Source: Blastocladiella emersonii ATCC 22665
Taxonomy: Eukaryota; Fungi; Blastocladiomycota
DNA length: 64,000 nt
Reading direction: 5' to 3'
Assembly (NCBI GenBank): GCA_025594325.1
Contig: JANHCV010000003.1
Location: 2,294,001 to 2,358,000, forward strand
Shown: positions 473-49,571 of the stretch, one piece after another
How the letters are laid out: each line of letters begins with the position of its first letter
How positions within the stretch are numbered: position 1 is the first letter of the stretch
Position numbers and translations under genes: made by a program
The notes under the pieces: generated by a model
Told to the model about the DNA's origin: nothing
The model's input: the letters and a program-made list of their open reading frames with translations, nothing else
The model's database searches: none

Positions 473-574
473 GGGCTGCTCCCCCGCCGCCTCAGACCGA
501 GTTGACCATCAACACCTCCTCTTCCAGCGCCACCACACCCACACCCACTCCACCACCTCCACCACCTCTTCAAG

Positions 575-1447
575 ATGACCTTCGGCCCGATCTTCGTCCC
601 GCCCGTCCAGTCGCAGTCGCAGTCGCAGTTCCAGAACCAGTGGGGCGGCAACGGCGCCCAGCATCAGTCCCAGTCGCAGTCGCAGACCCAGTTTGGCGGC
701 AACGGCTCGCAGCCGCAGTCCCAGTCGCAGACCCAGAACCAGTTTGGCGACGGCGGCAACCAGTCGCAGTCGCAGTCGCAGTGGCAGTCGCAGTTCCAGG
801 GCCACAACTCGGTCGACCCCGCGCAGCAGCAGTCCCAGTCGCAGTCGCAGACCCAGTGGGGCGACGGCGGCGCTCAGTCGCAGTCACAGTGGCAGACGCA
901 GAACGGCGGCAACGGCGCCCAGAACCAGTCCCAGTCGCAGTCGCAGTTCGGCGACGGCGGTGCTCAGTCGCAGTCGCAGTGGCAGGCGCAGAACGGCGGC
1001 AACGGCGCGCAGAACCAGTCGCAGTCGCAGTCGCAGACCCAGTTCGGCGACCATGGCGCTCAGTCGCAGTCGCAGTGGCAGGGCCAGTGGGGCAGCAACA
1101 ACTCGGGCGACGCGGCGCAGCAGCAGTCGCAGTCGCAGTCGCAGACCCAGTGGGGCGACCACGGCGCCCAGTCGCAGGCCCAGTCGCAGTGGCAGCAGAA
1201 CCACGGCGGCGACGCGTTCCAGGCCCAGAACCAGTGGCAGCAGCAGGGCCAGTGGGGCAACCACAGCTCGACCGACGGCGACGGCGGCTCGCTCATTGCC
1301 AGCGGCGGCGACCCGGCGACCTGGGGCCCGTCGCCCGCGGACGGCGGCGGCAACGGCGACTTCCACCACCTGCTCCCGACCCCGCACCATGGCGACGTCG
1401 GCGGCGACGTCATGACGCTCCTGCCCGTCCACCACAACCTCATGTGA
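575..1447 (+). CDS. Intronless 290-aa Gln/Ser/Gly-rich repeat protein with His-containing C-terminal tail
   Basis: ATG after a CA-rich leader and TATA-like motif; many QSQSQSQ(T/W)Q(F/W)G(D/G)xGA units; consistent codon use (cag tcg); no Lys or Arg; the alternative frames are shadows. Confidence 0.8.
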   Translation: MTFGPIFVPPVQSQSQSQFQNQWGGNGAQHQSQSQSQTQFGGNGSQPQSQSQTQNQFGDGGNQSQSQSQWQSQFQGHNSVDPAQQQSQSQSQTQWGDGGAQSQSQWQTQNGGNGAQNQSQSQSQFGDGGAQSQSQWQAQNGGNGAQNQSQSQSQTQFGDHGAQSQSQWQGQWGSNNSGDAAQQQSQSQSQTQWGDHGAQSQAQSQWQQNHGGDAFQAQNQWQQQGQWGNHSSTDGDGGSLIASGGDPATWGPSPADGGGNGDFHHLLPTPHHGDVGGDVMTLLPVHHNLM

Positions 1448-7110: not shown

Positions 7111-7351
7111 GATCGCACCTTCCCATCACTCCCACATAAGGGCCCGTTTGGTTCAGATCAGGTGGATCAGCTGAAAAAGTTGCCACGTTTCACCTCACCC
7201 CCCTTCATCTCAGCGGCCGTGCGGACCAAACGCCCCGCTGGATGAACGCCCCCCCCCCGCAATAAAATCTTTCCCACCTCTTTGCAGCCGCACTTATTGC
7301 AACGAATCAACACCTAACCTCACGCATCGTGTTCTCGAGCCCTCGAACAAC

Positions 7352-8669
7352 ATGGGCAAGGGATACAACCGCAAGCTGCGCGGCCTCATGCTCACGGCCG
7401 CCCTCGCTCTCCTGCGACGTCTCGCTGCTCGCAACGAGCGCCGCTCGCGGGAGCCTATCCGCACGTCCACGCTTTCCGGCGAGTCGTGGGTTCAAGAGCT
7501 GCTGACGTGTAACAGCAAAACGCGTTTTTCGGAAATCGTCCGTATGCCCCGCAAGACCTTCAAGGCCATCTGCCGCCTGTTCCGCGACCGTGGACTTCTC
7601 GCCGACGGCCGCAAGCTGTCCGTCGAGGCGCGCTTCATGGTTTTTCTTGTCATGGCCGGCGAGGGCAGCACCAACCGCAACCTCAGGGAGCGGTTCCAAA
7701 TCTCTGGCGAGACCGCGTCCAGCGTTCTGAAGAAAGTGATCGACGCTCTGTACCGCCTGATGCCCGAGTTCACTGTCCAGCCGTCCGATTCTACGCCCGT
7801 GCATGAGCGCATCGCCCACGACCCGAAATACGCTCCGTTCCAGAACGCGGTCGGCGCGCTTGACGGAACGCACATCCCGTTTGTTGTGCCCACTAAGCTT
7901 CACGACTCGTTCCGAAACCGCAAGGGGACCATATACTCAAATGTCCTCGCTGCCTGCGACTTTGACTTGAACTTCACCTACGTTCTCGCAGGGTGGGAGG
8001 GCAAGGCGCACGACTCGCGCGTGCTCTCGGACGCCTTCGCCCGTGGGTTCAAGATCCCCGCCGGCCGCTTCTACCTCGCCGACGGCGGCTACGCAAACCG
8101 CACGTCCATCATCGTGCCCTTCCGCGGTACCCGCTATCATCTTCGCGAGTTTGCTCGCGGCAAGGATGGGTACGTTCTCACTGCCATGACCATCACGTTG
8201 GCGCCATCTCATCTGCTTCACCAACGTACGTAGAGTTAAGAACCGCGAAGAGCTTTTCAATCTGCGTCACGCGTCGCTCCGCAACTCCATTGAGCATATC
8301 TTTGGCGTGCTCAAGAAGCGGTTCCGCGTCCTCTCGATTGGCGCGGCCTACCCAATCAAGACTCAAGTCAAGCTTGTGTACGCGCTCTGCACGCTGCACA
8401 ACATGATCAACAAGTGGAACCAAGGCGGCGACGCCTTCTTTCGCGACGCCGAGACGGAGCTCCGGCGCGCGCGGGACGCGGCGCGTGAGGCGCCAGTACG
8501 TGGGCGCGAGCCCCTGGACGACGAGAACGAGGAGGACGACGAGGCCGCTGTCCTCGAGGCCTCGCTGGACGGAGCTCGTCAGCGCGGTATCTCGCTTCGG
8601 AACCGCGTCGCAAATGTTCTTTGGACCGAGTACAGGCGCGTCATGGCCGCTCGTGGGACCCGTCTTTGA
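7352..8669 (+). CDS. Harbinger DDE transposase, 417 aa, 2 exons
   Basis: join(7352..8169, 8234..8669), 64-bp intron; motifs GALDGTH, YLADGGY, FNLRHASLRNSIEHIFGVLKKRF. Confidence 0.93.
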
Positions 8670-8982
8670 AGGCGCGAAATAATTGTTGTACCCGCATGCA
8701 TGCTGTAATATACTGATTTGTCAAGTACTATAACGTTAGATAAGCGATTCCAGATGATTTGACGCGTCGCTGAGGTCAGAACGCATCGGTGGAGACGCGT
8801 CGATCAATCACGTGACGTGTGAGACACTTTGAGAACCACGCGTTTCTCAACGAGTCGCGTCATTTTCGAGCGAAGGGTAACGATTGAAGATACGATGGAC
8901 ACAAAGCCAGATGTATTGGACACAAATGGGCGAGAACAAGGCCAGGAAGCAACGCGAGGGGAGGGGGACATGTGCGAGAGAG

Positions 8983-9360
8983 CTACTGAATGAAAAACTC
9001 GAGGACGCGCTTGCGCTTCGATTCGGACACGGCCATGACGCGAAGCGCTTGATCCTCGGTCAGGCGGGTGGCGACGTCGATCTGGTACTCTTCATTGTCA
9101 TTGTACGCGTCCTGGACCCATTCAAGTGCGGCGGTCAGAACGGGCTTGGAGTCGGCGGTCGCGACGCTCTGGAACACCTCCTTGATGCCCATGAGGAATT
9201 CCGAGTCCGAGAGGCGACGCGAGCTGCTGTCCGAAGTGCGGCTGCGCTTGCTGGCGGGGGCCGCGTCGTCTTGACCATCGACACCTTCCACGTCACCAGA
9301 CTCCTTGCCGTCCTGCTCGAGGTGCGAGTACTCGCCGGTGGTGGTCGAGCTGCCCCACGA
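8983..9360 (-). pseudogene. 3' remnant of the Harbinger Myb/SANT-like gene
   Basis: Translation matches 23859-24234; the DNA-binding exons are lost at the junction ttttcct|tc|gtggggc. Confidence 0.9.
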
Positions 9361-9599
9361 AGGAAAACAGCGTTTATATAGGCCGGGAAGCACAGCCTGA
9401 AGGTTTCGGGGGCGAGCAGACGGGCAATTCAGCGACGAGGGTTCCATTCAGCTCATCCGGGGGTCGACCCAAACGCCGCGATGAACGCGACGGGGTGAAA
9501 ATGCCACGTTTCAGCTGGGTGAACACCGGACCGTGTAAAATCGATTGATCCACCTGATTCACCCCGGAACCAAACGGGCCCTAACATGCTGCCGACGAT

Positions 9600-22466: not shown

Positions 22467-23089
22467 ATCGCTTGGACTTGCGAGTTGTAAATCTATATCC
22501 GCAGCGCGCATGGGAAAGTTCAAGCGAACGTTTCGTGGCAAAGTCGCACCAGTCGCAATCCACCGCCACTCGCGTGAAAGTGGCGCCCCGCCAAAGAAAC
22601 CCGGAGGAAGTCTTAAAATCGTGAGTTGGCCGCGTTGCTGTGGATACGACCACGGCGAGATATCTCGGCTTTTGGGCTGGGCGCGTCGCTGCGACTTCAT
22701 CACGCACCGACGGTCGCGGACGACAACAATGAGATGATGATGGACGGACAAGCAGACTGAATCCGTGTGAGTTACATGTAATATATCTCCCTCTTCGTTT
22801 TATCGTGCAGCTTGACTTAGGGCCCGTTTGGTTCCGGGGTGAATCAGGTGGATCAATCGATTTTACACGGTCCGGTGTTCACCCAGCTGAAACGTGGCAT
22901 TTTCACCCCGTCGTGTTCATCGCGGCGTTTGGTTCAACCCCCGGGTGAGCTGAATGGAACCCTCGTCGCTGAATCGCCCGTCTGCTCGCCCCCGAAACCT
23001 TCAGGCTGTGCTCCCCGGCCTATATAAACGCCGTTTTCCTCCAAAGTAACTCGCTCTCTCTCCCCCGTCCTCCCTCAAAGCCGAAAAGA

Positions 23090-24234
23090 ATGGCTCCCCC
23101 GTCAAGCAAAAAGCGCGCTGGCCGTACGGCCATGTCCATCGAGGAGATCGTCAAGAACGTGCCCGAAATCCCGCCGCCGCCCGCCGATAGCGACGAGGAT
23201 GCAGATGACGACGCTGCTGGGAGCGACGGCAACGCTGCTGTCACGCCGACCAACCCGCTGCCGCCCGTGACCATCGCCAAGCCAAGCAAACGCAAGGCCA
23301 GTGGCAGCAAGGCCAGCAGCGGCAAGGCCAGCAGCGGCAAGGCCAGCGGCGGCAAGGCCACCTTCTGCTCCGCGTCAACCAACTTCCTCCTCGACCACTT
23401 CTGCAACCTCGCTGACGACGGCGTGTTCGGCGACAGCAACACGCTCAAGGCCCAGCACCGTGTGTCGATTGCCCAGGCCCTGTCGGACGAGTTCAACATG
23501 CAGTTTACGGCGGAGCAGGTCAAGAACCGCATGACATACGTACGCTTTGTCTTGCGGACACGCGTCAACCGTAGCGCTAACAACGTCAGCGTTCGGCTCC
23601 AGCTTCGCACTTGTTTTCGCGCCGTAAAACGGCTTCTGTCGTACTCGGGCAACGGCTGCACCTGGAATGAGGGTGAGTGCACGGTCGACGTGCCAGAGGA
23701 GTTCTGGAACGATCTCTCGGTACGTTTGTTCAATATCGTTACGCGTCAACTCGCGGCGAGCTAACAGCGCCTGGCCTGCTTCAATTGTAGGCAGAGCTCA
23801 AGGAGGAGCTGACTGCGGGCTGCAAGCCCTTCCCGTACTACAAGAAGGCCAACATGCTGTGGGGCAGCTCGACCACCACCGGCGAGTACTCGCACCTCGA
23901 GCAGGACGGCAAGGAGTCTGGTGACGTGGAAGGTGTCGATGGTCAAGACGACGCGGCCCCCGCCAGCAAGCGCAGCCGCACTTCGGACAGCAGCTCGCGT
24001 CGCCTCTCGGACTCGGAATTCCTCATGGGCATCAAGGAGGTGTTCCAGAGCGTCGCGACCGCCGACTCCAAGCCCGTTCTGACCGCCGCACTTGAATGGG
24101 TCCAGGACGCGTACAATGACAATGAAGAGTACCAGATCGACGTCGCCACCCGCCTGACCGAGGATCAAGCGCTTCGCGTCATGGCCGTGTCCGAATCGAA
24201 GCGCAAGCGCGTCCTCGAGTTTTTCATTCAGTAG
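23090..24234 (+). CDS. Harbinger Myb/SANT-like DNA-binding protein, 336 aa, 3 exons
   Basis: join(23090..23539, 23603..23719, 23791..24234), phase-0 introns; FLLDHF...IAQALSDEFNMQFTAEQVKNRMTYLRTCF...SGNGCTWNE...FPYY; TATATAAA at 23021. Confidence 0.9.
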
Positions 24235-24547
24235 CTCTCTCGCACATGTCCCCCTCCCCTCGCGTTGCTTCCTGGCCTTGTTCTCGCCCATTTGTGTCCA
24301 ATACATCTGGCTTTGTGTCCATCGTATCTTCAATCGTTACCCTTCGCTCGAAAATGACGCGACTCGTTGAGAAACGCGTGGTTCTCAAAGTGTCTCACAC
24401 GTCACGTGATTGATCGACGCGTCTCCACCGATGCGTTCTGACCTCAGCGACGCGTCAAATCATCTGGAATCGCTTATCTAACGTTATAGTACTTGACAAA
24501 TCAGTATATTACAGCATGCATGCGGGTACAACAATTATTTCGCGCCT

Positions 24548-25865
24548 TCAAAGACGGGTCCCACGAGCGGCCATGACGCGCCTGTACTCGGTCCAAAGAA
24601 CATTTGCGACGCGGTTCCGAAGCGAGATACCGCGCTGACGAGCTCCGTCCAGCGAGGCCTCGAGGACAGCGGCCTCGTCGTCCTCCTCGTTCTCGTCGTC
24701 CAGGGGCTCGCGCCCACGTACTGGCGCCTCACGCGCCGCGTCCCGCGCGCGCCGGAGCTCCGTCTCGGCGTCGCGAAAGAAGGCGTCGCCGCCTTGGTTC
24801 CACTTGTTGATCATGTTGTGCAGCGTGCAGAGCGCGTACACAAGCTTGACTTGAGTCTTGATTGGGTAGGCCGCGCCAATCGAGAGGACGCGGAACCGCT
24901 TCTTGAGCACGCCAAAGATATGCTCAATGGAGTTGCGGAGCGACGCGTGACGCAGATTGAAAAGCTCTTCGCGGTTCTTAACTCTACGTACGTTGGTGAA
25001 GCAGATGAGATGGCGCCAACGTGATGGTCATGGCAGTGAGAACGTACCCATCCTTGCCGCGAGCAAACTCGCGAAGATGATAGCGGGTACCGCGGAAGGG
25101 CACGATGATGGACGTGCGGTTTGCGTAGCCGCCGTCGGCGAGGTAGAAGCGGCCGGCGGGGATCTTGAACCCACGGGCGAAGGCGTCCGAGAGCACGCGC
25201 GAGTCGTGCGCCTTGCCCTCCCACCCTGCGAGAACGTAGGTGAAGTTCAAGTCAAAGTCGCAGGCAGCGAGGACATTTGAGTATATGGTCCCCTTGCGGT
25301 TTCGGAACGAGTCGTGAAGCTTAGTGGGCACAACAAACGGGATGTGCGTTCCGTCAAGCGCGCCGACCGCGTTCTGGAACGGAGCGTATTTCGGGTCGTG
25401 GGCGATGCGCTCATGCACGGGCGTAGAATCGGACGGCTGGACAGTGAACTCGGGCATCAGGCGGTACAGAGCGTCGATCACTTTCTTCAGAACGCTGGAC
25501 GCGGTCTCGCCAGAGATTTGGAACCGCTCCCTGAGGTTGCGGTTGGTGCTGCCCTCGCCGGCCATGACAAGAAAAACCATGAAGCGCGCCTCGACGGACA
25601 GCTTGCGGCCGTCGGCGAGAAGTCCACGGTCGCGGAACAGGCGGCAGATGGCCTTGAAGGTCTTGCGGGGCATACGGACGATTTCCGAAAAACGCGTTTT
25701 GCTGTTACACGTCAGCAGCTCTTGAACCCACGACTCGCCGGAAAGCGTGGACGTGCGGATAGGCTCCCGCGAGCGGCGCTCGTTGCGAGCAGCGAGACGT
25801 CGCAGGAGAGCGAGGGCGGCCGTGAGCATGAGGCCGCGCAGCTTGCGGTTGTATCCCTTGCCCAT
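24548..25865 (-). CDS. Harbinger DDE transposase, 417 aa, 2 exons
   Basis: join(25865..25048, 24983..24548); translation identical to 7352-8669. Confidence 0.93.
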
Positions 25866-27813
25866 GTTGTTCGAGGGCTCGAGAACACGATGCGTGAGGT
25901 TAGGTGTTGATTCGTTGCAATAAGTGCGGCTGCAAAGAGGTGGGAAAGATTTTATTGCGGGGGGGGGGCGTTCATCCAGCGGGGCGTTTGGTCCGCACGG
26001 CCGCTGAGATGAAGGGGGGTGAGGTGAAACGTGGCAACTTTTTCAGCTGATCCACCTGATCTGAACCAAACGGGCCCTTAGTTATGGGAGAGAAATCGCG
26101 ACCGTCGCGGTGGTCGGCGTGGCCAGCAGCAGGTTCCCGTCGTGGGCTCCACTTTAGGACTCCGCCGCGCTCGGCCGCCACCCATAGTTTCCTGGCCTTC
26201 CGTCCGCAACACTCGCGTCACTTCGGTGCCCGACGTTGAACTTCCTGACACGTTTGGTATGTTAGACATCTCTTAGGAGTGGATCCGCAAGCTCGCCGAG
26301 GTCAACTCGAGGCGGTCCGCTTCATGGCCGCTTCGACCTGCGTCCCACAGCCCCGGCCAGCAGTACCGTTGGTGCGGGTGATGATAGAGCTCCAGGTGGT
26401 GTGTCTGTGAGGGTGGCTAGTAGGTTGCGCGCGAGCACCAAGACGTATCGCGAGTTGCGGTCCGCGACGAGACTGCGCGGCGGAGCGTTCTGTTTCTTAA
26501 CGAACGCGAGGACCGAAGTTTGAGTTGTTACGATTGTTTTCTGCATCGTGTATGGTGGTCCGTGGTGGCGCGGACGCGTCGAGTGCGGCTCGGGGCGGAC
26601 GCGCGAGACAGTGCGAGACGCGTCGCGAAAACACGTGATGCGCGTTTTTTGATCGGCGCGCTGCGCGTTGGCCGCTTCGGCGCTTCGGCGATGGACTCTG
26701 CGCTTCCGCAGCCACACGCCCCCGCCCCCTGCTCGCTCGCTCCCGCCCGGCCCCTACATAAGCGGGCGGGTCCCCTTGCACCGACTGCCGCTCCCGCACA
26801 CGCTCGCCGCCGCCGCCATCCCATCCGCCGCTCCACGCCGCCGTCGCTGCACACTCGACCCGCGCCCGCCTACCAAGTGGAGCTTGCCGCCCGACCGATT
26901 GATGCTACACGACGACGCGCACCCGCACTCGCACGCTTGGCTCCACGTCACGGTGCGCGTCCCCGCGACCCGCTCGTCCCCGCGACCCGCTCGTCACGGC
27001 GCACGCGCGCGGCGGCGACGTCGGTCGCCCGCCCGCCCACCTCTCGTGGTGATGGGCCCGAGACCGACGTGGATGCCACTCCGCCGCCGCCCTGCTCGCC
27101 GTCTCCCGCACATCCGCGCCCGCGCAGTGTGTCTCACTAGCTCTCGTCGCGATCCCGTAGCTCGCGCGCCCCGCATCAGCGCTGAGCGGCCCGCGCAGTC
27201 GCGTCGGTTGCCGCCACAATCACGGCGAGCGGGTGCGCCTCCTGCACGCGCGCTGGGTCGCAGCTCAGCGTCTCACGTCCGATCGCTCGCGCTCGCTGCC
27301 CGTCTAGACTCGCGGAGACGGTGCCAACTCGGCGCTCAAGCTTGACGAAGTCGCGTGCGGTCTCGGTACGATCACGCTTCTCGCGTCCACCACCGCGGCG
27401 ATGACTAACTCGGCGCCTGCCGCGATCCGTTCCTTCTATTCGAGCGCTCAGGTGCCGCGGCGGCCAAGGCGGGCGCAACACGGGTACGTTCTCGCTCTGC
27501 TTGCACGACAGCTCCCTCGATCCCGCTCCTCACCTCGGTCCCCCGCACTCGCCCCGCTGTAGCCTCGACTGAGCGCGTCAAGTGCTTCAAGATGACCACG
27601 GCCGCGAGTGACGGCGGCGGCGCGAGGACCGCGGCAGCGGCGCGCGCGCGTGCATGGGCTCGACGTGGGTGCGGCGCGGGCGGACCGTGGTCGGGGCGGC
27701 CATCGTCGCAGTAGCAGTGCGGGTGCGGTGCTGGGGTGCAGGGCGTGCGCGCTGGCCGCGGCCCTGATCCCGGCGCCGCCCCCCGCTTTTTTTTGCGTCC
27801 CGTGATCCCTATA

Positions 27814-39129: not shown

Positions 39130-39810
39130 ATCTTGTGGCCTTCCGTATCCCTCTGACTTGAATCACTTGAAGCGGGAGCGAACTTTGAGCGATCCGTTGA
39201 AGCGAGCTCGCGACGGCCGGCCTTGGATCACGGTTGCCTTGACGAAACAGTTTGGGTCCAAGTTGCGCAAACTGTTCCTGTGGATCTCGACGGGGCGGGC
39301 TCGCCGCGGGGTGAGATGATCGGGGAGTGCGATCACTGCTTGTACTTGAGACTTAAGTGCGGGGTGACATTAGGAGGTACGAGGGGAAGAGCGAATGATT
39401 CTGAGCGTAAGAAAAATTCTTCAGTGCGTAAATACGCGATGGATGACCATGGCCACGACCATGGCCATCCAACCACAGACGTTCGCGTCGCGCGAGCCGT
39501 CAAAACGGCAATACTTTCTAAACTTGAGCATGCAGGAAGCTAAAGGCTCCATCGGCGAATGAAGCGATGCTTCCCCGGCGGAGTTCAGAAAGTGGGAGAG
39601 TTGAGAGCGACATCGGCGCGGCGCGTGACGCGATCTCATCATCTTGCGACGCCCGAGCCATAAAGGCGGCGACGTTTTCCAGGGCTGAACATAAAGGAGG
39701 CTAACGAACACGCCCGAAAACAGGTTATACGCTTTTCCGGTGGAGATCAGTAAACACAGAAGAGTTGGAGAGTCAACAGCTGCTGGCCACGACCGTGGCC
39801 ATCGATTAAG

Positions 39811-42247
39811 TCACGCTGACAATCAACAACACGACCGTTCCAAGAGATGAATATAAACTATATTATATTCTTGTTGATAATACGACACGTTTAAGCAGCG
39901 CAGACGCCCTTGGGACTCGCAATGGCGCGCTGGAAGGCGGGCATGGAGACGAGCGAACCCGTGTTGGCGGACGTGCCTGACCGCGCGGTGCACCCGCCGT
40001 TGGTGTGGATGCCCACGGCGACGTCTCCGACACTAATTACCGCGCCGCTGCAGCCGCCCTCAGTGTCAATACGGTGACGCACGTGGAAGCGGTCGGGCAG
40101 CGACACGACCTTGCCGTCGGCCTCCTGCTGCACCTGCGACATTTGCTTGCGCGCCTGCGACGTGACGAAGCCGTAGCCGTAGATCTTGACGGCGTCGCCC
40201 GCCTTGACCGCGTTGGCCGCGTCGAGGTTGCCCGTCGCGGCGTCGACCTTGGCCAGCGTGTACGCCTTGTTGCCGATCGTCTCGCGGTGCGTCATGCCCG
40301 TGTTCGGGTTTGGGAAGGTCCCGAAATACGCCCAGTCCTCGGCGGCCTCGCCCCCGCTGAGCGGCGTCAGGTTGAACTGCACCGACTTGGTGTCGACGGC
40401 AAACTGGAACTTGGGGTGCGGGTGGCGCAGGATGGCCGTGCGCTGGCCCGCGGTCGTGATGACCGCCGACTGCGGCACGTTGACCTGGATGATCTGGTCC
40501 TCGAGCTCCTTGCCCTGGAAGCAGTGGCCCGCCGTGACGTGGCACCCGTTCTTGTCCGTGATGGTCCAGGCGCTGCAACCTACGGGGAAAATTCGCGTGG
40601 ACCGCGGGTCCGACGACGCCTTGCGCTCGTCGGCGGCCGTGCACAGCGACGCGGGCGGCGGCAGCTGCGCCTTGTTGGACCCGAACCCGGTCTGCGTGTT
40701 GGTCTCGAGCTGCGACACGATCACCGACGGCTTTTCCTTGGGATCCGTGTTCGGGTCGGCGAGCAGCTCGATCTTGAGCTTGCCGCCGTTGAAGACGGCC
40801 GACCGGAAGTTCCACTGCGCGATGGACTCGAAGTTGAGGAACTGCACCGCGCCGTCGGCCAGCGACGTGATGCGCAGAATGTCGCCCGGCAGGTCCTCGC
40901 CGAACCCGGGAAAGTCGACGCGGATAAAGTTCTCGCGCAGCTTGGTCTGCGCCTTGTCAAAGTGCAGGCGCGACCAGAAGATGTTCTTGGCGCCCGGCTG
41001 GACCTGGGCCACGTCGATGGTCTGCTCGAACACGACGACGTGTCCGTTGCGCGTCACGGGCGTGGGCGTGCCCGACGGCGTTGTTGGTGGTGCGGCACTG
41101 GTTGTTGAGGTGGGAGGACGCGCGGGCGGCTGGCCGGGGAACACGATGCCGCCGTCATTCCCGTTGTTCTGGTCGCCGGGGAACGCGATCGCGCCGTCGT
41201 CGGCCTTGGCCTTGCGTGCAGGCGGGGCCGCCGCGGTCGGGTTACGCGTGGTGGTCGTGGCGGGCGGCGCGGCCTTGCGCGCGGGAGCACGCTGGCCGGG
41301 GAAGACGATCGAGCCGTCGTCGTTGGGGAACACGATGGCGCCGCCGTTGTTGTTGTTGTTGGCCTTGGGGCGGCGGTTGACGACCTCCTCGACGGCGGCG
41401 AGCGACGGAGCCGTCGTGCTCGCGCCGCGCAGGGCAGCAGCGGACGCGGTGCCGGTCGCGGCGGTGCTCGAGGCCGGCGGGGCCGATGCCGTTGCGGTGG
41501 CCGCCGAGGTGGAAGCGGGCGCGGTCGCCGTGGCGGTGCCGTTGCCCGGCTGGCGACCGGCGCCGGGCGGGAGCTGCACGTCAATGTTGGCCTTGCCGAA
41601 CGACACCTTGATGAACTCTCGGGCCTCGGGGACCAGCAGCGGTGACGCCTCGTTGGCGGCGGGCGCGGCTTGGGTCGCGGGCGAGGTGGCGAGGGCGGCG
41701 AGGACGAGCGTCGCCACGGCCACGGCCGTGAGGCGGCCGATGCGCGGGCGGCGGTGCGAATAGGTGGACGAGGTCATGATGCTGATTGAGGTGATGGCTT
41801 CTAACAGTCGATATTGGGGAGTGTATGTGTAGGGCAGCGACGATCTACGTCGGTAGGTGCGGATCACTCTGGAGGGACGCGGGTCGCGCGCGGTTCTTAT
41901 ACGCCCCGCGCTCCTCCCTCAGGGCTGCACGACCCAACAAGTCGGAACTTGCATCGCGTGCGAGTCGACAGCAGCGAGACAGGAATAACAACCGTTCACG
42001 TAACGCCAGGTCCCGAAAGCCGCCTGTGAGCGGGAAACGAGCCGCGATCGGATGCTGGCGTTTCGCTCCTTCCATTTCTCTGAGACGCGACGCGGCGGGC
42101 TGGCGCGGCGCCGAGGCAGCTGCTGAGACGCGTATCAGCGGCTCGAGTGTGGTTCAGGATCGGCGCCGGCGCGGGGCGTTGTGGCGGTCACAGGGCGCCG
42201 AGGTGGCGCAGCTCTGGGGCTCGAGGGCGCAGCCACACCGGCTCGCG
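39811..42247. repeat. Left arm of large inverted repeat (2437 bp)
   Basis: Mirror of 46608-49044 (coordinates sum to 88855); mirrored ORFs in all frames translate identically; spot-checked bases identical. Confidence 0.95.
39891..41777 (-). CDS. Secreted trypsin-like (S1, bacterial-type) serine protease, copy 1, 628 aa, intronless
   Basis: Signal peptide (LTAVAVATLVLAALA); low-complexity pro-region with 4 G(A/S/G)I(V/A)FP repeats; triad TAGHC / DWAY / DTEGGCSG; GIHTNGGC. Confidence 0.88.
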   Translation of the reverse strand: MTSSTYSHRRPRIGRLTAVAVATLVLAALATSPATQAAPAANEASPLLVPEAREFIKVSFGKANIDVQLPPGAGRQPGNGTATATAPASTSAATATASAPPASSTAATGTASAAALRGASTTAPSLAAVEEVVNRRPKANNNNNGGAIVFPNDDGSIVFPGQRAPARKAAPPATTTTRNPTAAAPPARKAKADDGAIAFPGDQNNGNDGGIVFPGQPPARPPTSTTSAAPPTTPSGTPTPVTRNGHVVVFEQTIDVAQVQPGAKNIFWSRLHFDKAQTKLRENFIRVDFPGFGEDLPGDILRITSLADGAVQFLNFESIAQWNFRSAVFNGGKLKIELLADPNTDPKEKPSVIVSQLETNTQTGFGSNKAQLPPPASLCTAADERKASSDPRSTRIFPVGCSAWTITDKNGCHVTAGHCFQGKELEDQIIQVNVPQSAVITTAGQRTAILRHPHPKFQFAVDTKSVQFNLTPLSGGEAAEDWAYFGTFPNPNTGMTHRETIGNKAYTLAKVDAATGNLDAANAVKAGDAVKIYGYGFVTSQARKQMSQVQQEADGKVVSLPDRFHVRHRIDTEGGCSGAVISVGDVAVGIHTNGGCTARSGTSANTGSLVSMPAFQRAIASPKGVCAA

Positions 42248-42812
42248 GCTCGCGCTTCGCAGCCGCGGACTCGGACTCGGACTCGGCTCCTGGTGAGATC
42301 CAAGCGACGGCGAGACTGCAACGCGAAAGCGGAGGGTGCGGAGAACGACGCCCAAGGCTGCGTGCCACCGTGAGGCATGAGTTCGCGAGTCAGCATCGCC
42401 ATTTTCTGATCCGGCGGGCCTTGGCTTGGCTTCACCAGGTCGTGCACGTTCTGTTGAGCGTCCCACTCGCTGCGAAGCGAGGTCTGGTGCTTCGCTCGCG
42501 GTGTCGCGCGGGTTGCCTCACGCGTTCGGATATCACGCTAGCGTCACCTGATCGTCTCAGCTGTGGCGCAACGCGCTTTCGTCGCACGCTGGCTCCGGCG
42601 ACCGGGGAGGAGCCCGCAACGCGCAGCATGTATCCCGGACGTCAATGACTTGATATGGCCTTCTGAGAAGTGAAGCTCGAACGAGGTTCCGACCTTCAGA
42701 GGCGACGACGCGCAACGCGACACGCGATAACTTCTTCAAGCTCTGCCCGAGGAAAGACGCTGTGCACACACACAAAGTTGTTGATCTATTGAACGCAAGG
42801 TTCATCGTCTAT

Positions 42813-44159
42813 CTACACCTCAAGCGCCGGCGCCGTCGGCTTGCTCTGCGGCTGTACCTTGGCCGCCTCCACCTCGGCCTTGCGGCGGCGCTCGGCGCGC
42901 ACGCTGTACACGGTGCCAACCAGGATTAGGAAGAGCGTGGCAAACATTGGCGACCACCACCACCGGTAGGTCCCGAATGCGCCGAGGTAGGGCGCAGCGA
43001 GGTGGTCCGGCGTGATCGGGGTGAACATCATGTCCTTGGCGACCATGGGCACGGCGCTCGCGTGCACCTCCGCGAGGCACGTCTTGTCGGGCCCGCAGTT
43101 GGCCGACAGGACGCACTCGGCGTTGCTGGAGCACGAGTCGCCGGAAAACTTGCCCGCCTGGAACGTGCCCGTCTTGCCGCCGCCGCTCGCGACGCACCGA
43201 CCGAGCGTCGCGTGCCCGTTGAGGTCGCCGCCCTTCTTGCCGCCGAGCACCTCGAGCTTGGCCATGGTGCGGTACGAGAGAACGGGGAACGGGTGCTGCG
43301 CGGCCTCGTCCGACTTGCGGAACGCGTTGAGCGGCTCCCCGACGTCGAGGCGGCGCGTCACGTCGAGGTCCGGGTTCTTGGCCGACCACGCGAGCTTGCC
43401 CGCCGTGACCCACCGCTCATCGGCGTCGATGACCCACCCGTCAGCGACCGCGAGCTTGCCCGAGTCGTATGCGGTCGCATCACACGGCGCACCGATGGGA
43501 AGCGACGGCATGCAGATCCCGACGCGTAGCTTCTTGTCGGCGGGGCGCACCGTGACGTTGGCGAGCGAGGCGGGGACGGGCAGCTTGGCCGACTCGAGGT
43601 AGCCGCGGTAGACGGCGAGCCCAAGCGGCGTGATGTCGCCGTTGTTGCTCAGCTCGTCGAGGTTGGGCGGCGCCTCGAGGTGCAGCTTCGGGTACACGCC
43701 GCGCGCGGCGAGGGCCGGGTGGTCGACGGGCACGCACACGTCGGACAGCGCCGTGGCCGTGAGGAGCGAGCAGTGGCGCAGCATGCAGTCGAGCTCGACG
43801 CTGGGCGACTTGCCGCGGGTATCTGCGCAGTGCCGCTTGCCGCACTCGGTGCGGGCCGACTCGAGCGTCATGGGCGGCATGCGGTTGCTGGTGCGCGGGC
43901 GCTCGCCGAGATCGCAGCCGAACCCGTCGAGCTGGCCGGAGCCGGGCGTCGTCGGGTCGATCAGGCACAGGTTCGGGAAGTTGGCGCTCGGGGACAGCGT
44001 CGCGGACTCGGCGTCGCCAGCGGCAGCGCTCGCGGCGGGCTCGATCCCGGGGAAGACGCCCGTGGCGAGCGTGTCGTTACTCGTGTAGACGAACGACACG
44101 TTCCGCAGGCGCAGGTCGTCCTTGAAGACCTTGATGGCGGCGCTGTACTGCTCGGCCAT
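42813..44159 (-). CDS. Cys-rich single-pass membrane protein, 448 aa; paralog of 17745-19557
   Basis: CVPVDHPALAARGV, GICMPSLPIGAPC, GDSCSSNAECVLSANC; C-terminal TM MFATLFLILVGTVYSV followed by basic residues. Confidence 0.8.
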   Translation of the reverse strand: MAEQYSAAIKVFKDDLRLRNVSFVYTSNDTLATGVFPGIEPAASAAAGDAESATLSPSANFPNLCLIDPTTPGSGQLDGFGCDLGERPRTSNRMPPMTLESARTECGKRHCADTRGKSPSVELDCMLRHCSLLTATALSDVCVPVDHPALAARGVYPKLHLEAPPNLDELSNNGDITPLGLAVYRGYLESAKLPVPASLANVTVRPADKKLRVGICMPSLPIGAPCDATAYDSGKLAVADGWVIDADERWVTAGKLAWSAKNPDLDVTRRLDVGEPLNAFRKSDEAAQHPFPVLSYRTMAKLEVLGGKKGGDLNGHATLGRCVASGGGKTGTFQAGKFSGDSCSSNAECVLSANCGPDKTCLAEVHASAVPMVAKDMMFTPITPDHLAAPYLGAFGTYRWWWSPMFATLFLILVGTVYSVRAERRRKAEVEAAKVQPQSKPTAPALEV

Positions 44160-44476
44160 GTTGATGCGTTGCACTCAGGAGGTTCCGGGTGGAGACTGAG
44201 CGGGACGGGACACGCTCCTCTTTGTACATAGGGCGAGCGAACGCGACGATGGCCGAGGTCGCCCTCGCAGGAGACCCAGGCACTTCGCTTCGCGTGAAAC
44301 AAGGCAGAGTACGCCACGGCGCCACACGGCGCCCGACGACGCCACAGCGCAGGCGAGCGTGTGTTTCCTCGCGCGAGCGTGATGGGGCAGCTGATCTCCT
44401 CTCACTCTCCCACTCGCGCCGCATGGGCCCATGTCACTTTATGATCAATGCATGCTGCGACCCACACGATCCAGCA

Positions 44477-46190
44477 TCACACGAACCGCGACGTCAGCGC
44501 GAGCGAGACGGCGAACACGAGGCCGAGCGTGCCCGCGAGCCACCACAGCCAGAGGTTGAGTTTGCTGCTGCCGTTTCCGCGCTCGGGTCGCACGTCCGAC
44601 CCGTCGGCGTTTGACTGGTCGTTCTCCTCGAACGGGCGCTGCGGGTCCCACCGCATCGCAAAGGCGAACTGGCGCAGCGCTGCGCGGAGCGCGCCGTCGT
44701 CGTCGTGTTGAGCGGGACCCTCGCTGGCGCCGTCGGCGAGCACGAACTTGGCCATGAGCTTGCGGTACACCTTCTGGTACCGGTTGTACAGGCCCGCCTG
44801 CATCGCGGGCGAGTAGTCCCACAGCCACGCAAAGATGGCGGAGATGAACCACAGGCGCGCGCGGAACACGGCGATCCGGAGCTCGGACGGGCGCGCGATG
44901 CCGAGCGTCGAGGCAAAGTCGTTGCCGAGGTACAGGTGCGCCGAGGCCTCGGAGCCGGCCTTGCTGCGGTACGCGGGCGGCTGGTTGACACGGCCCTCGA
45001 CCAGGCTGGCCGCCAGCGTGCGCGACGTCTCCGTCACATGGTACTGGTGGAGGCCGAGCGCGAGGCGCGCGCGGACCGCGTGCTCGACGGGATCTACGCC
45101 GGGCGGCGGCGGGGCAAGCGTGCCCGCGACGTATGGGCGCTCGGCGGCCGCAGCCGGAGCGAGCGCGTTGTACTCGGTCTTGACGCCGAGCAAGTAGAGA
45201 ATGTACGCCCACGTGTGGAGGTAGTCGACCTTGCGCTCGTGCGGCACGTCGAAGCCAAACTTCTTGAGGCCCTCGAGGATCTTGACCGAGAACGTGATCC
45301 CCGTGAGGAACATGTCGGGCTGGTTCACGGCGGTGCCGTACAGCGCCGCGTCGTACTTGGGCGAGTCGCGGAGCCGATGGCGAACTAGAGCAGGATCGAG
45401 ATGGCGGGTGAGTGACCATGGTCGTGCGAGACTGATCGACCGCCGTACCTAGAGCGTGCAAGGATCGGACGTTGACGACGTTGAGCCAGCCCTCTCCGAA
45501 CGGAGAGATGGACTCGACGCTTGCCAGGGCGGTGAAGACCATGTGCGAGGTCTCGGCGAGGCGCCGCATGACCGTGTTCTTGCGGCGACTCGTGAGGTAG
45601 CCCGTGGCGACCAGCACCTGGTTGATCGAATCGGCCGCGTAGCCGCCGAGGAGAGAGTACGAGCTGAGCGTCTCGGCGTTGAGGATAAAGTACTTCCAGT
45701 AGAGAGACTGGCCGCGCGCGACCGAGGCCCAGTCGACCCAGCTCGGGACGGTGGTGACGGCGCGCCAGAAAGCCATGACGGCGTCTCGATCAGCGGGAGA
45801 CATGGTGCCAAGGTTGAGCGGCGGCACCGTCTTGTTGTTCTCGTCGGCTCCGGTCGAGGCCTTGGGGACGGCAGCAGGATCGAGTGCAGCAACGACACGC
45901 ATCAGGAAGCTCGCCATGTTGTGAGGTGCGAAAGCGACCGCGGGCGTTGCCTGTGGATCGGAACCCTTGCACGCTTCAAGCGCCTTGTGGAGGCGGAGCA
46001 ACGCAGCGAGAGCCGCATCGGCCAGATCATCGCCCTCGGAGCGGATCGACTCAAGGAACTCGAGCGAGGGGAACTCGGCGGTCGACCACTTGAACGTGAA
46101 GGCACCGACAACGCTGACACGTTCGCCGTCGGCGGGGCTGACGACGCGGCGCGACGCCTTGAACAACGAGGCGCTTTCATTCGAGTTCAT
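44477..46190 (-). CDS. ER-bound oxygenase MpaB / rubber-oxygenase-like (DUF2236) protein, 549 aa, 2 exons
   Basis: join(46190..45449, 45384..44477), 64-bp intron; GDDLADA, PSWVDW...RGQ, SLLGGYA, RRLAET, VRSLHALVR, VNQPDM, DYLHTWAYI..LLGV; C-terminal TM anchor. Confidence 0.85.
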
Positions 46191-46607
46191 GATTCAAGCA
46201 ATTTGCATAGAGTATGGGCAAGTTCTTTTAAGACAGCGGGTAGAGGGATGAGCTGGATCAGGGGGAAGGCGATCAGGAGGCGACTCGGGAGACAGCAAGG
46301 CGTGCTGCGCCACAGCTGAGACGATCAGGTGATGCTGGCGTGATATCCGAACGCGTGAGGCAACCCGTTCAGCACCGTGAGCGAGTCGCTTCGCAGCACG
46401 GAAAAGACTCTCAGAAAAACGTGCACGACCTGGTGAAGCCAAGCCAAGGCCCGCCGGATCAGAAAGTAGCGATGCTGACTCGCGCACTCAGTGCGCCTCG
46501 CGGCGGCGCATGCTTGGCATCGTCCTCCGCACCCTCCGCTTTCGCGTTGCAGTATCGCCGTCGCTTGGATCTCACCAGGAGCCGAGTCCGTGGCCGCGGC
46601 TGCGAAG

Positions 46608-49044
46608 CGCGAGCCGGTGTGGCTGCGCCCTCGAGCCCCAGAGCTGCGCCACCTCGGCGCCCTGTGACCGCCACAACGCCCCGCGCCGGCGCCGATCCTG
46701 AACCACACTCGAGCCGCTGATACGCGTCTCAGCAGCTGCCTCGGCGCCGCGCCAGCCCGCCGCGTCGCGTCTCAGAGAAATGGAAGGAGCGAAACGCCAG
46801 CATCCGATCGCGGCTCGTTTCCCGCTCACAGGCGGCTTTCGGGACCTGGCGTTACGTGAACGGTTGTTATTCCTGTCTCGCTGCTGTCGACTCGCACGCG
46901 ATGCAAGTTCCGACTTGTTGGGTCGTGCAGCCCTGAGGGAGGAGCGCGGGGCGTATAAGAACCGCGCGCGACCCGCGTCCCTCCAGAGTGATCCGCACCT
47001 ACCGACGTAGATCGTCGCTGCCCTACACATACACTCCCCAATATCGACTGTTAGAAGCCATCACCTCAATCAGCATCATGACCTCGTCCACCTATTCGCA
47101 CCGCCGCCCGCGCATCGGCCGCCTCACGGCCGTGGCCGTGGCGACGCTCGTCCTCGCCGCCCTCGCCACCTCGCCCGCGACCCAAGCCGCGCCCGCCGCC
47201 AACGAGGCGTCACCGCTGCTGGTCCCCGAGGCCCGAGAGTTCATCAAGGTGTCGTTCGGCAAGGCCAACATTGACGTGCAGCTCCCGCCCGGCGCCGGTC
47301 GCCAGCCGGGCAACGGCACCGCCACGGCGACCGCGCCCGCTTCCACCTCGGCGGCCACCGCAACGGCATCGGCCCCGCCGGCCTCGAGCACCGCCGCGAC
47401 CGGCACCGCGTCCGCTGCTGCCCTGCGCGGCGCGAGCACGACGGCTCCGTCGCTCGCCGCCGTCGAGGAGGTCGTCAACCGCCGCCCCAAGGCCAACAAC
47501 AACAACAACGGCGGCGCCATCGTGTTCCCCAACGACGACGGCTCGATCGTCTTCCCCGGCCAGCGTGCTCCCGCGCGCAAGGCCGCGCCGCCCGCCACGA
47601 CCACCACGCGTAACCCGACCGCGGCGGCCCCGCCTGCACGCAAGGCCAAGGCCGACGACGGCGCGATCGCGTTCCCCGGCGACCAGAACAACGGGAATGA
47701 CGGCGGCATCGTGTTCCCCGGCCAGCCGCCCGCGCGTCCTCCCACCTCAACAACCAGTGCCGCACCACCAACAACGCCGTCGGGCACGCCCACGCCCGTG
47801 ACGCGCAACGGACACGTCGTCGTGTTCGAGCAGACCATCGACGTGGCCCAGGTCCAGCCGGGCGCCAAGAACATCTTCTGGTCGCGCCTGCACTTTGACA
47901 AGGCGCAGACCAAGCTGCGCGAGAACTTTATCCGCGTCGACTTTCCCGGGTTCGGCGAGGACCTGCCGGGCGACATTCTGCGCATCACGTCGCTGGCCGA
48001 CGGCGCGGTGCAGTTCCTCAACTTCGAGTCCATCGCGCAGTGGAACTTCCGGTCGGCCGTCTTCAACGGCGGCAAGCTCAAGATCGAGCTGCTCGCCGAC
48101 CCGAACACGGATCCCAAGGAAAAGCCGTCGGTGATCGTGTCGCAGCTCGAGACCAACACGCAGACCGGGTTCGGGTCCAACAAGGCGCAGCTGCCGCCGC
48201 CCGCGTCGCTGTGCACGGCCGCCGACGAGCGCAAGGCGTCGTCGGACCCGCGGTCCACGCGAATTTTCCCCGTAGGTTGCAGCGCCTGGACCATCACGGA
48301 CAAGAACGGGTGCCACGTCACGGCGGGCCACTGCTTCCAGGGCAAGGAGCTCGAGGACCAGATCATCCAGGTCAACGTGCCGCAGTCGGCGGTCATCACG
48401 ACCGCGGGCCAGCGCACGGCCATCCTGCGCCACCCGCACCCCAAGTTCCAGTTTGCCGTCGACACCAAGTCGGTGCAGTTCAACCTGACGCCGCTCAGCG
48501 GGGGCGAGGCCGCCGAGGACTGGGCGTATTTCGGGACCTTCCCAAACCCGAACACGGGCATGACGCACCGCGAGACGATCGGCAACAAGGCGTACACGCT
48601 GGCCAAGGTCGACGCCGCGACGGGCAACCTCGACGCGGCCAACGCGGTCAAGGCGGGCGACGCCGTCAAGATCTACGGCTACGGCTTCGTCACGTCGCAG
48701 GCGCGCAAGCAAATGTCGCAGGTGCAGCAGGAGGCCGACGGCAAGGTCGTGTCGCTGCCCGACCGCTTCCACGTGCGTCACCGTATTGACACTGAGGGCG
48801 GCTGCAGCGGCGCGGTAATTAGTGTCGGAGACGTCGCCGTGGGCATCCACACCAACGGCGGGTGCACCGCGCGGTCAGGCACGTCCGCCAACACGGGTTC
48901 GCTCGTCTCCATGCCCGCCTTCCAGCGCGCCATTGCGAGTCCCAAGGGCGTCTGCGCTGCTTAAACGTGTCGTATTATCAACAAGAATATAATATAGTTT
49001 ATATTCATCTCTTGGAACGGTCGTGTTGTTGATTGTCAGCGTGA
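46608..49044. repeat. Right arm of large inverted repeat (2437 bp)
   Basis: Reverse complement of 39811-42247; a diverged extension continues inward (46306-46607 vs 42248-42570). Confidence 0.95.
47078..48964 (+). CDS. Secreted trypsin-like (S1, bacterial-type) serine protease, copy 2
   Basis: Translation identical to copy 1. Confidence 0.88.
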   Translation: MTSSTYSHRRPRIGRLTAVAVATLVLAALATSPATQAAPAANEASPLLVPEAREFIKVSFGKANIDVQLPPGAGRQPGNGTATATAPASTSAATATASAPPASSTAATGTASAAALRGASTTAPSLAAVEEVVNRRPKANNNNNGGAIVFPNDDGSIVFPGQRAPARKAAPPATTTTRNPTAAAPPARKAKADDGAIAFPGDQNNGNDGGIVFPGQPPARPPTSTTSAAPPTTPSGTPTPVTRNGHVVVFEQTIDVAQVQPGAKNIFWSRLHFDKAQTKLRENFIRVDFPGFGEDLPGDILRITSLADGAVQFLNFESIAQWNFRSAVFNGGKLKIELLADPNTDPKEKPSVIVSQLETNTQTGFGSNKAQLPPPASLCTAADERKASSDPRSTRIFPVGCSAWTITDKNGCHVTAGHCFQGKELEDQIIQVNVPQSAVITTAGQRTAILRHPHPKFQFAVDTKSVQFNLTPLSGGEAAEDWAYFGTFPNPNTGMTHRETIGNKAYTLAKVDAATGNLDAANAVKAGDAVKIYGYGFVTSQARKQMSQVQQEADGKVVSLPDRFHVRHRIDTEGGCSGAVISVGDVAVGIHTNGGCTARSGTSANTGSLVSMPAFQRAIASPKGVCAA

Positions 49045-49571
49045 TGTGATCCATGGCCACAGTCGCGAGTCGACTTCCTTTCCCTGCGCGCGTCCTCGCT
49101 TCAATTTGAGAGATTCGGTTCTTACAGAGCACTTTAGATAGGAGAAGTCACTGAGGGATCCACAATAACTGCTGGAAGTGCCGTTGTGTTGATAGTACGC
49201 GTAAACCATGGCCATGGCCGCGATCGCGCCCACCTCCTCGTTCCCAACACATACTGATCTCAATCCGAAACTTAAATCTCTCCCGCTCTTCCTTTATCGA
49301 AGTCGCCGCCTTGGTGATTCGCCCGACACGCTCATGTCATGGATGGCCATGACGTGGCCACGGCCGCCGCTCACTTCCGCGCTGATTGAAGTTACGCTGC
49401 GTCTCCCGCGCGACGCGCGTCCGCCTTGTCGATGACCGTTCTCTCGTGCATTCCTCACCTCCCTTGACTGTTGAACCCGTTCGGGCCTCCCCTCTCGATC
49501 CGCACAATAGTCATACACGCAATGATCATTCACTCCCACAAATGCAAACCTCCTCCACCAACTCACCTCCA

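What the first reader, a model, noticed from the sequence alone, without database searches (positions are those of the whole stretch)
39811..49044. 9.2-kb gene-bearing palindrome: identical 2.44-kb arms with diverged edges (arm-to-arm gene conversion)
Seen: 39811-42247 and 46608-49044 appear to be exact reverse complements, including synonymous sites (all frames translate identically). Homology continues inward for ~300 bp (42248-42570 vs 46306-46607) with many substitutions and indels, and outward for ~20 bp with mismatches. No TSD or transposase was found. An old duplication would be uniformly diverged and a new one would have sharp ends; an identical core with diverged flanks on both sides indicates an old inverted duplication still being homogenised, as established for sex-chromosome palindromes. 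Inference: concerted maintenance of double protease dosage; the 3.7-kb spacer may also flip.
Basis: partly seen in the sequence, partly recalled or inferred. Interest (0 to 1): 0.85.

Follow-up and report, generated by a model that had tools for sequence, protein, structure and literature searches.

The report
Small protease-gene palindrome in Blastocladiella
The water fungus Blastocladiella emersonii really carries two mirror-image, letter-identical 2.4-kb copies of a secreted protease gene whose edges are about 10% diverged, which is best explained by one copy having recently overwritten the other; the structure is a known kind and one of many in this genome.

Summary
Window 39811-42247 and 46608-49044 are exact reverse complements (2437 bp, no differences). 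Homology continues inward for about 333 bp (30 substitutions in 304 aligned sites, 9 indels). It continues outward for 21 bp with 5 mismatches (chance about 1 in 10,000).

The window is Blastocladiella emersonii ATCC 22665, contig JANHCV010000003.1, a PacBio HiFi assembly. Contigs built from the raw reads give the arms twice the depth of the flank and spacer, with no half-depth variants. The arms are therefore identical in the raw data, so this is not a polishing artefact.

Each arm holds one intronless gene for a 628-aa secreted V8/glutamyl-endopeptidase-like serine protease, plus 470 bp upstream and 80 bp downstream. The spacer holds two other genes.

The best reading (about 0.7) is an old inverted duplication whose core was recently overwritten by arm-to-arm gene conversion. 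Ongoing homogenisation, selection for double dosage and spacer flipping were not tested.

The scan has already confirmed at least eight palindromes on other DNA of this genome. I also found a second one, with a 7970-bp exact core, around a paralogous protease on the same contig. This is a new member of a known kind, of moderate interest.

The parts
39790..39810 (.). Left outer diverged margin (16 of 21 matches to the reverse complement of 49045-49065)
   Evidence: chance about 1e-4
39811..42247 (.). Left arm, exact core (2437 bp, identical to the reverse complement of 46608-49044)
   Evidence: twofold word depth in raw-read contigs
39891..41777 (-). Protease gene copy A: intronless, 628 aa, signal peptide, low-complexity Ala/Thr/Pro region with repeated G-x-I-V-F-P motifs, C-terminal V8/glutamyl-endopeptidase-like S1 domain (His418, Asp481, Ser577)
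   Evidence: frame-specific GC3, translation, annotated gene model, family alignment and profile search
42248..42580 (.). Left inner diverged edge (upstream region of copy A); begins at a 7-bp tandem-duplication indel followed by a 6-bp GGACTC-repeat indel
   Evidence: single-copy depth of 110
42813..44159 (-). Spacer gene 1: 448-aa Cys-rich protein with a C-terminal hydrophobic segment and no Pfam family
44477..46190 (-). Spacer gene 2: 549-aa mpaB/Lcp-type oxygenase-like protein with one short intron near 45350
   Evidence: frame change in GC3, annotation, Pfam PF09995 with E 4.9e-5 on the second exon
46297..46607 (.). Right inner diverged edge (upstream region of copy B, shared intergenic region with spacer gene 2)
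   Evidence: seen in raw-read contigs (records 5, 7, 12, 14)
46608..49044 (.). Right arm, exact core
47078..48964 (+). Protease gene copy B, identical to copy A
49045..49065 (.). Right outer diverged margin

Best explanation
This is a real chromosomal inverted duplication (a small palindrome) in the nuclear genome of Blastocladiella emersonii. A unit of about 2.8 kb was duplicated in inverted orientation long ago, on either side of two unrelated genes. The unit holds one intronless secreted V8-like serine-protease gene with about 800 bp of upstream and about 100 bp of downstream DNA. The two copies then diverged to roughly 0.1 substitutions per site, with many indels. Later, homologous recombination between the arms copied 2437 bp of one arm over the other. 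This was intrachromosomal gene conversion, probably mitotic, since no sexual cycle is known to me for this species. It erased all differences in the gene, its proximal promoter and its 3' end. Only the margins kept the older divergence: 333 bp on the inner side and 21 bp on the outer side. Shown here: the structure, its presence in raw reads at two copies, and the sharp step from 0% to about 10% divergence. Inferred: the order of events, and conversion as the mechanism. The inner tract end sits at a 7-bp and a 6-bp indel, which fits heterology blocking the tract, but with 9 indels in 333 bp that coincidence is not significant. The outcome is two identical, outward-facing protease genes with identical proximal promoters. 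Whether that doubling is selected is unknown.
For: There are no differences in 2437 bp, against 30 substitutions and 9 indels in the adjoining 333 bp and 5 mismatches in the outer 21 bp. The upper 95% bound on core divergence (3/2437 = 0.0012) is at least 86-fold below the edge divergence of 0.106. Selection cannot explain the identity. The core includes 470 bp upstream and 80 bp downstream of the gene plus all third codon positions, while paralogues differ at dS 0.30-0.44 and share no upstream homology. Both ends of the core are followed by diverged homology and not by a clean microhomology junction, so the older duplication extended beyond the core on both sides. Raw-read contigs give 2x depth on the arms and 1x on the flank, both inner edges and the spacer, with no half-depth variants. 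The assembly comes from about 185x HiFi reads of mean length 10.5 kb, longer than the whole 9.2-kb structure. A second palindrome on the same contig, around paralogue P0002, shows the same signature: a 7970-bp exact core with diverged margins of 45 and 31 bp. The scan's earlier follow-ups report similar two-tier palindromes elsewhere in this genome (not re-tested here).
Against: Only one genome of one strain is available, so arms identical within but different between strains has not been shown. The inner edge shows no gradient of divergence (21/23/22 differing letters per third), so there is no sign of repeated conversions with different end points. One event is enough. A recent duplication seeded on a pre-existing diverged inverted repeat would give a similar picture. 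The reads come from the same sample as the assembly, and k=31 contigs cannot confirm how the arms are linked to the flanks.
Confidence: 0.72

Rival explanations
1. A recent inverted duplication seeded on an older short inverted repeat. The locus first held only one protease gene and a diverged pair of about 330-bp inverted repeats flanking the spacer. A template switch or break-induced replication that started in one repeat then copied the gene in inverted orientation. That would create the identical arms in one step.
For: This also gives an identical core next to a diverged repeat. Inverted repeats are known substrates for such events (established knowledge; see for example PMC8748988, listed). 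The inner edge has no gradient of divergence.
Against: It needs an unexplained older inverted duplication of just 330 bp of promoter-like DNA. No other copy of that sequence exists in the window or in about 130 kb of fetched loci, and its depth is single-copy. The outer end of the core is followed by 21 bp of mismatch-interrupted homology (P about 1e-4). A clean microhomology junction would be expected instead. Three of the four positions next to the boundary are mismatched, which fits decayed homology. The second palindrome has diverged margins at both ends as well.
Confidence: 0.13
2. A young inverted duplication made by error-prone replicative repair (microhomology-mediated break-induced replication). 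On this reading the diverged edges are mutation clusters introduced at the template-switch junctions and do not reflect age.
For: Short diverged margins of 21-45 bp occur at the ends of both palindromes examined. Mutation clusters near such junctions are an established feature of that repair route (my own knowledge, not checked in a paper here).
Against: The inner edge carries 30 substitutions and 9 indels spread evenly over 333 bp, with a transition:transversion ratio of 19:11. That looks like ordinary long-term divergence. It is far denser and longer than the junction-associated clusters known to me.
Confidence: 0.06
3. An assembly or polishing artefact: a collapsed or mis-polished repeat, a false fold-back, or a haplotype mis-join.
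For: The assembly was Pilon-polished with 65-bp reads, which cannot place reads uniquely in a 2.4-kb repeat. In short-read run X2 the inner half of the arm is only about 1x deep (33-35 against 37-38). A genome with many perfect palindromes invites suspicion.
Against: In the low-bias run X1 every arm contig is 221-237 deep against 113-123 for unique DNA. There are no half-depth alternative contigs within the core. Both inner-edge versions are present at single-copy depth, and the spacer is one 4027-bp single-copy contig that ends in both edges. The X2 dip coincides with a very G+C-rich low-complexity stretch where depth drops to 4, so it is coverage bias. A fold-back artefact has no 4.3-kb gene-bearing spacer or distinct flanks. 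Mean HiFi read length exceeds the whole structure.
Confidence: 0.04
4. Two inverted insertions of a mobile element that carries the protease gene.
For: The same window holds a 2222-bp, 100% identical inverted pair (7137-9358 and 23859-26080).
Against: The unit has no terminal inverted repeats above background (score 15-16 against a random mean of 16). The arms and spacer hold no transposase or recombinase domain. The core is present in exactly two copies by depth. Paralogues share only coding sequence. Insertion of identical copies would not leave diverged edges.
Confidence: 0.02

Closest known systems
Gene-bearing palindromes of mammalian, bird and willow/poplar sex chromosomes kept over 99% identical by arm-to-arm gene conversion (for example PMC8327919, PMC8600007, PMC7023750, bioRxiv 10.1101/800185)
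   Same: Inverted arms lie around a unique spacer. Protein-coding genes sit in the arms and also in the spacer, as in 11 of 26 human X palindromes. Arm identity far exceeds what the age of the duplication predicts.
   Different: The arms are 2.4-2.8 kb, not 8-140 kb or more. The host is a zoosporic fungus with no known sex chromosome. The gene is a secreted protease and not a germ-line gene. Conversion is inferred from a within-genome step in divergence and not from comparison between species.
Long repeat sequences of Candida albicans (Todd et al. 2019, eLife, as summarised in PMC6895784)
   Same: This is a fungal nuclear genome with hundreds of long repeats (65-6500 bp), many inverted and containing ORFs. 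They act as substrates for recombination, inversion and copy-number change, and the size range matches.
   Different: That work concerns the rearrangements the repeats cause. An identical core within diverged edges was not checked there. The organism and lineage are very distant.
Other palindromes of the same B. emersonii genome already reported by this scan (s1-076256, s1-269494, s1-248135 and others), and the P0002 palindrome found here
   Same: Same genome, same perfect-core architecture, gene-bearing arms and spacers. Some are two-tier with diverged outer parts.
   Different: This one has the shortest arms (2.4 kb against 5.6-25 kb) and a single-gene arm, and its diverged tier lies on the inner side. 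It shares a gene family with the second palindrome on the same contig.

Membership tests
Palindrome homogenised by arm-to-arm gene conversion | Two inverted copies on one chromosome separated by a unique spacer | tested here: met
   spacer of 4360 bp between the cores, 3716 bp without any homology
Palindrome homogenised by arm-to-arm gene conversion | Arm-to-arm identity above 99% | tested here: met
   2437 of 2437 identical; no variants in raw-read contigs
Palindrome homogenised by arm-to-arm gene conversion | 'Large' arms (at least 8-10 kb in the sex-chromosome literature) | tested here: not met
   Arms are 2.44 kb exact, 2.79 kb with diverged edges. The size threshold is as used in PMC8327919.
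Palindrome homogenised by arm-to-arm gene conversion | Arms more alike within a genome than the age of the duplication allows (concerted evolution) | tested here: met
   Within-genome proxy only: core divergence 0 (at most 0.0012) against edge divergence 0.106. P of that clustering under uniform divergence is about 1e-39 (my calculation).
Palindrome homogenised by arm-to-arm gene conversion | Arms identical within but different between strains or species | not testable with these tools
   Only one strain and sample was available. No relative's locus could be found.
Invertible (flip-flop) segment | Both spacer orientations present in the population of molecules | not testable with these tools
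   The only read-laying run returned k=31 contigs, which cannot bridge a 2.4-kb exact repeat.
Invertible (flip-flop) segment | Site-specific recombinase encoded at or near the repeats | tested here: not met
   No recombinase domain in the arm, spacer or neighbouring genes.
Transposable element copies in inverted orientation | Terminal inverted repeats, a transposase, or more than 2 copies | tested here: not met
S1 (chymotrypsin-fold) serine protease, V8/glutamyl-endopeptidase-like branch (the arm gene) | Significant sequence similarity to the family | tested here: met
   The family profile hits V8 protease and glutamyl endopeptidases with E 2e-9 to 1e-6. Paralogue P0007 passes the Pfam Trypsin cut-off (30.5 bits against a gathering score of 20.6). 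The window protein alone gives no Pfam hit.
S1 (chymotrypsin-fold) serine protease, V8/glutamyl-endopeptidase-like branch (the arm gene) | Catalytic His-Asp-Ser triad conserved | tested here: met
   H418 (TAGHC), D481 and S577 (GGCSG) are invariant in 13 family members. The serine motif aligns with that of V8 protease. The assignment of Asp481 is by position only.
S1 (chymotrypsin-fold) serine protease, V8/glutamyl-endopeptidase-like branch (the arm gene) | Proteolytic activity and secretion | not tested
   No experiment was done. The signal-peptide-like N-terminus was read.

The most novel reading that the evidence does not exclude
B. emersonii, for which I know of no sexual cycle, may maintain dozens of gene-bearing palindromes across its chromosomes by frequent mitotic arm-to-arm conversion. 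That would be an autosome-wide counterpart of the self-repair proposed for Y-chromosome palindromes. Families such as this bacterial-type secreted protease would then be preferentially kept as perfect pairs (two of its seven members lie in separate palindromes), with invertible spacers that could change the regulation of neighbouring genes.
Probability: 0.15. Interest if true: 0.7.

Novelty: new member of a known kind. Interest (0 to 1): 0.4.

Why it matters
Taken alone, this locus is a textbook-clean small example of conversion between inverted paralogues. A difference-free core, non-coding DNA included, sits inside edges about 10% diverged, so transfer between copies can be inferred from one genome. 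Its wider value is as one more data point for a genome-wide pattern that the B. emersonii genome paper does not mention: many perfect gene-bearing palindromes outside any sex chromosome, in an early-diverging fungus. If a census and other isolates confirm that pattern, it would extend arm-to-arm conversion, studied mostly on sex chromosomes, to ordinary fungal chromosomes. It would also offer a laboratory organism in which conversion and spacer inversion rates could be measured. For annotation, it means that the two protease genes are true identical duplicates and not an assembly error.

Tried and rejected
- **Pfam on the arm ORF.** Scans of the whole ORF and of its C-terminal half gave nothing. 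The protease call needed a family profile searched against solved structures.
- **PDB search with the single sequence.** It gave only a chance hit.
- **TE hypothesis.** Rejected: no TIR, no transposase, two copies only.
- **Repeated-element origin of the inner edge.** No other copy was found in the window or in any locus fetched by then (L001-L006). The whole genome could not be searched.
- **Apparent read variant at 40401 (A>G, depth 354).** It is the state of paralogue P0002, carried on a contig sharing 31-mers with the arm. It is not an arm difference.
- **About 1x depth of the inner arm in run X2.** This is G+C-related dropout, since depth falls to 4 at 41467-41663. It is not evidence for a single copy.
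- **Gradient of divergence in the inner edge**, which would have indicated repeated conversions. None was found.
- **RNA evidence.** No RNA run was listed.
- **tRNA genes at the boundaries.** None.
- **Earlier notes on spacer orientation, or on the P0002 locus.** Nothing was returned.
- **Outgroup polarisation of the edges.** Impossible, because the paralogue loci share only coding sequence.

Full report
**What is there**

The repeat finder reports one inverted pair, 39790-42253 and 46602-49065, plus three shorter inverted pieces just inside it at 89-92% identity. A base-level alignment gives an exact core of 2437 bp, 39811-42247 against the reverse complement of 46608-49044, with no differences.

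Inward, homology continues to about 42580 and 46297. There are 30 substitutions in 304 aligned sites (Jukes-Cantor distance 0.106; 19 transitions, 11 transversions) and 9 indel events covering 36 letters. These are spread evenly over the three thirds of the edge, with 21, 23 and 22 differing letters.

Outward, 16 of the next 21 positions match. An anchored extension that good arose in 22 of 200,000 random trials on this window. Beyond these limits the alignment is at background.

**Where it comes from, and whether it is real**

The arm protein matches hypothetical proteins of Blastocladiella emersonii ATCC 22665. The two copies are annotated on JANHCV010000003.1, a 2.64-Mb contig, which places the window at 2294001-2358000.

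The assembly was made with the La Jolla Assembler from about 185x PacBio HiFi reads. Their mean length of 10.5 kb is longer than the whole 9.2-kb structure. It was then polished with 65-bp Illumina reads.

- In run X1 the left flank contig has word depth 122.7 and ends 30 letters into the core. That is where a k=31 graph must branch.
- The spacer is one 4027-bp contig at depth 113.2 that ends in both diverged inner edges.
- The arm contigs have depths of 221-237.
- No alternative contig at half depth lies inside the core.

The contig breaks inside the arm, and the single 'other letter' (40401 A>G at depth 354), fall exactly on 31-mers that the arm shares with paralogous genes. The G at 40401 is the state of paralogue P0002.

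In short-read run X2 the inner half of the arm is only about 1x deep. That stretch is very G+C-rich, depth falls to 4 within it, and I read the dip as coverage bias.

The arms are thus two-copy and identical in the raw data. What these contigs cannot show is the linkage of arms to flanks, and hence the orientation of the spacer.

**Anatomy**

Frame-specific G+C content at third codon positions picks out one gene per arm, on the strand pointing away from the spacer. The gene is annotated as an intronless 628-aa product, at 39891-41777 on the minus strand and 47078-48964 on the plus strand.

- The core covers the gene, 470 bp upstream and 80 bp downstream.
- The diverged inner edges lie further upstream.
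- The protein has a signal-peptide-like start.
- It continues with an Ala/Thr/Pro-rich region with repeated G-x-I-V-F-P motifs.
- It ends in a C-terminal domain.

A profile of 13 family members matches V8 protease and glutamyl endopeptidases at E 2e-9. His418, Asp481 and Ser577 are invariant. The single sequence gives no Pfam hit.

The spacer holds a 448-aa Cys-rich protein without a family assignment and a 549-aa mpaB/Lcp-type oxygenase-like gene with one intron. There is no transposase, recombinase or tRNA gene. The repeated unit has no terminal inverted repeats above background.

**Why the identity is not simply youth or selection**

All 44 difference events fall in 354 of the 2791 homologous positions. 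Under uniform divergence the probability of that is about 1e-39 (my calculation).

The upper 95% bound on core divergence (3/2437) is at least 86 times lower than the edge divergence.

Selection cannot hold about 550 bp of non-coding DNA and every synonymous site identical. The nearest paralogues differ at dS 0.30-0.44 (dN/dS about 0.3) and share nothing outside the coding region.

So the sequence of one arm replaced that of the other long after the two copies had started to diverge. Edge divergence (0.106) is about a third of the dS to the nearest paralogue. This places the original inverted duplication after the split from that paralogue.

**Conversion or a seeded new duplication?**

A template switch started in an older 330-bp inverted repeat could also create identical arms next to diverged repeats. 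Three observations count against this.

- The outer end of the core is followed by decayed homology, with three of the four adjacent positions mismatched, then GAT, a mismatch and an 8-bp run. A clean microhomology junction would look different.
- The 330-bp edge has no other copy in the DNA I could search and is single-copy by depth.
- The second palindrome described below has diverged margins at both ends.

I put gene conversion of an old duplication at about 0.72. The seeded duplication gets 0.13, error-prone junction synthesis 0.06, artefact 0.04 and a mobile element 0.02.

I cannot tell one recent conversion from continuing homogenisation, because the inner edge shows no gradient. The core's inner end coincides with a 7-bp tandem-duplication indel and a 6-bp repeat indel. 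That fits heterology stopping the tract, but with 9 indels in 333 bp the coincidence is not significant.

**Context in the genome**

The protease family has seven distinct members in this genome, all intronless by gene length. Five are single-copy.

The nearest paralogue, P0002 (88% DNA identity in the protease domain), is also encoded twice, in a second palindrome about 470 kb away on the same contig. Its aligned arms are 8047 bp, with an exact core of 7970 bp and diverged margins of 45 and 31 bp. The spacer is about 9.4 kb and the genes point inward. The two palindromes share no flanking homology, so they arose independently.

The scan's notebook lists at least eight other followed-up palindromes in this genome, several with identical cores inside diverged arms. 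I did not re-test those. The genome paper does not mention palindromes or inverted repeats.

**Comparison with known systems**

The architecture and inferred process match the gene-bearing palindromes of sex chromosomes (PMC8327919, PMC8600007, PMC7023750). However, the arms here are below the size used to define 'large' palindromes, and the host is a fungus without known sex chromosomes.

The closest fungal parallel is the set of long repeats of Candida albicans, 65-6500 bp long and often inverted, which drive inversions and copy-number change (Todd et al. 2019, as summarised in PMC6895784).

I therefore file this as a new member of a known kind.

**What remains untested**

- The orientation or flipping of the spacer.
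- Expression of either copy. No RNA run was listed.
- Selection for double dosage.
- Comparison with any other strain.

Its claims about maintenance, dosage and flipping are not.

Noticed in passing
L001:9338-17383 and L002:9337-17382 (JANHCV010000003.1, about 1826366-1834411 and 1843827-1851872): A second palindrome on the same contig carries the paralogous protease P0002. Its aligned arms are 8047 bp, with a 7970-bp exact core (L001 9383-17352) and diverged margins of 45 bp (outer) and 31 bp (inner). The spacer is about 9.4 kb and the genes point inward.
   Followed up: partly
window 7137-9358 and 23859-26080 (also 9361-9584 and 22817-23040): Another 100% identical inverted pair of 2222 bp, 14.5 kb apart, with a 224-bp pair at 97% beside it. 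I did not examine them.
   Followed up: no
window 41136-41370 and 47485-47719: Three 46-bp direct repeats at 63-74% identity inside each protease gene encode the repeated G-x-I-V-F-P motif of the N-terminal low-complexity region. The function of that region is unknown.
   Followed up: no
window 39891-41777; loci L001, L005-L009: The V8-like protease family has seven distinct members (nine gene copies) in B. emersonii, all intronless. The nearest non-Blastocladiella relatives are about 35% identical metagenome proteins with Trypsin_2 domains. This fits the bacterial-origin idea raised in another note, but I built no tree.
   Followed up: partly
window 551-1240: An array of 13 overlapping copies of a 180-nt unit with start-to-start spacings of 12-57 bp (mostly 45-51 bp). 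This is a tandem repeat, probably coding.
   Followed up: no
   Followed up: no
runs X3 and X4, loose ends at 39526, 42349, 44453 and 44559: Loose ends read ATAACTTCGTATA..., a loxP-like linker. These older runs are therefore probably Cre-lox mate-pair libraries. This is technical and has no biological meaning.
   Followed up: no
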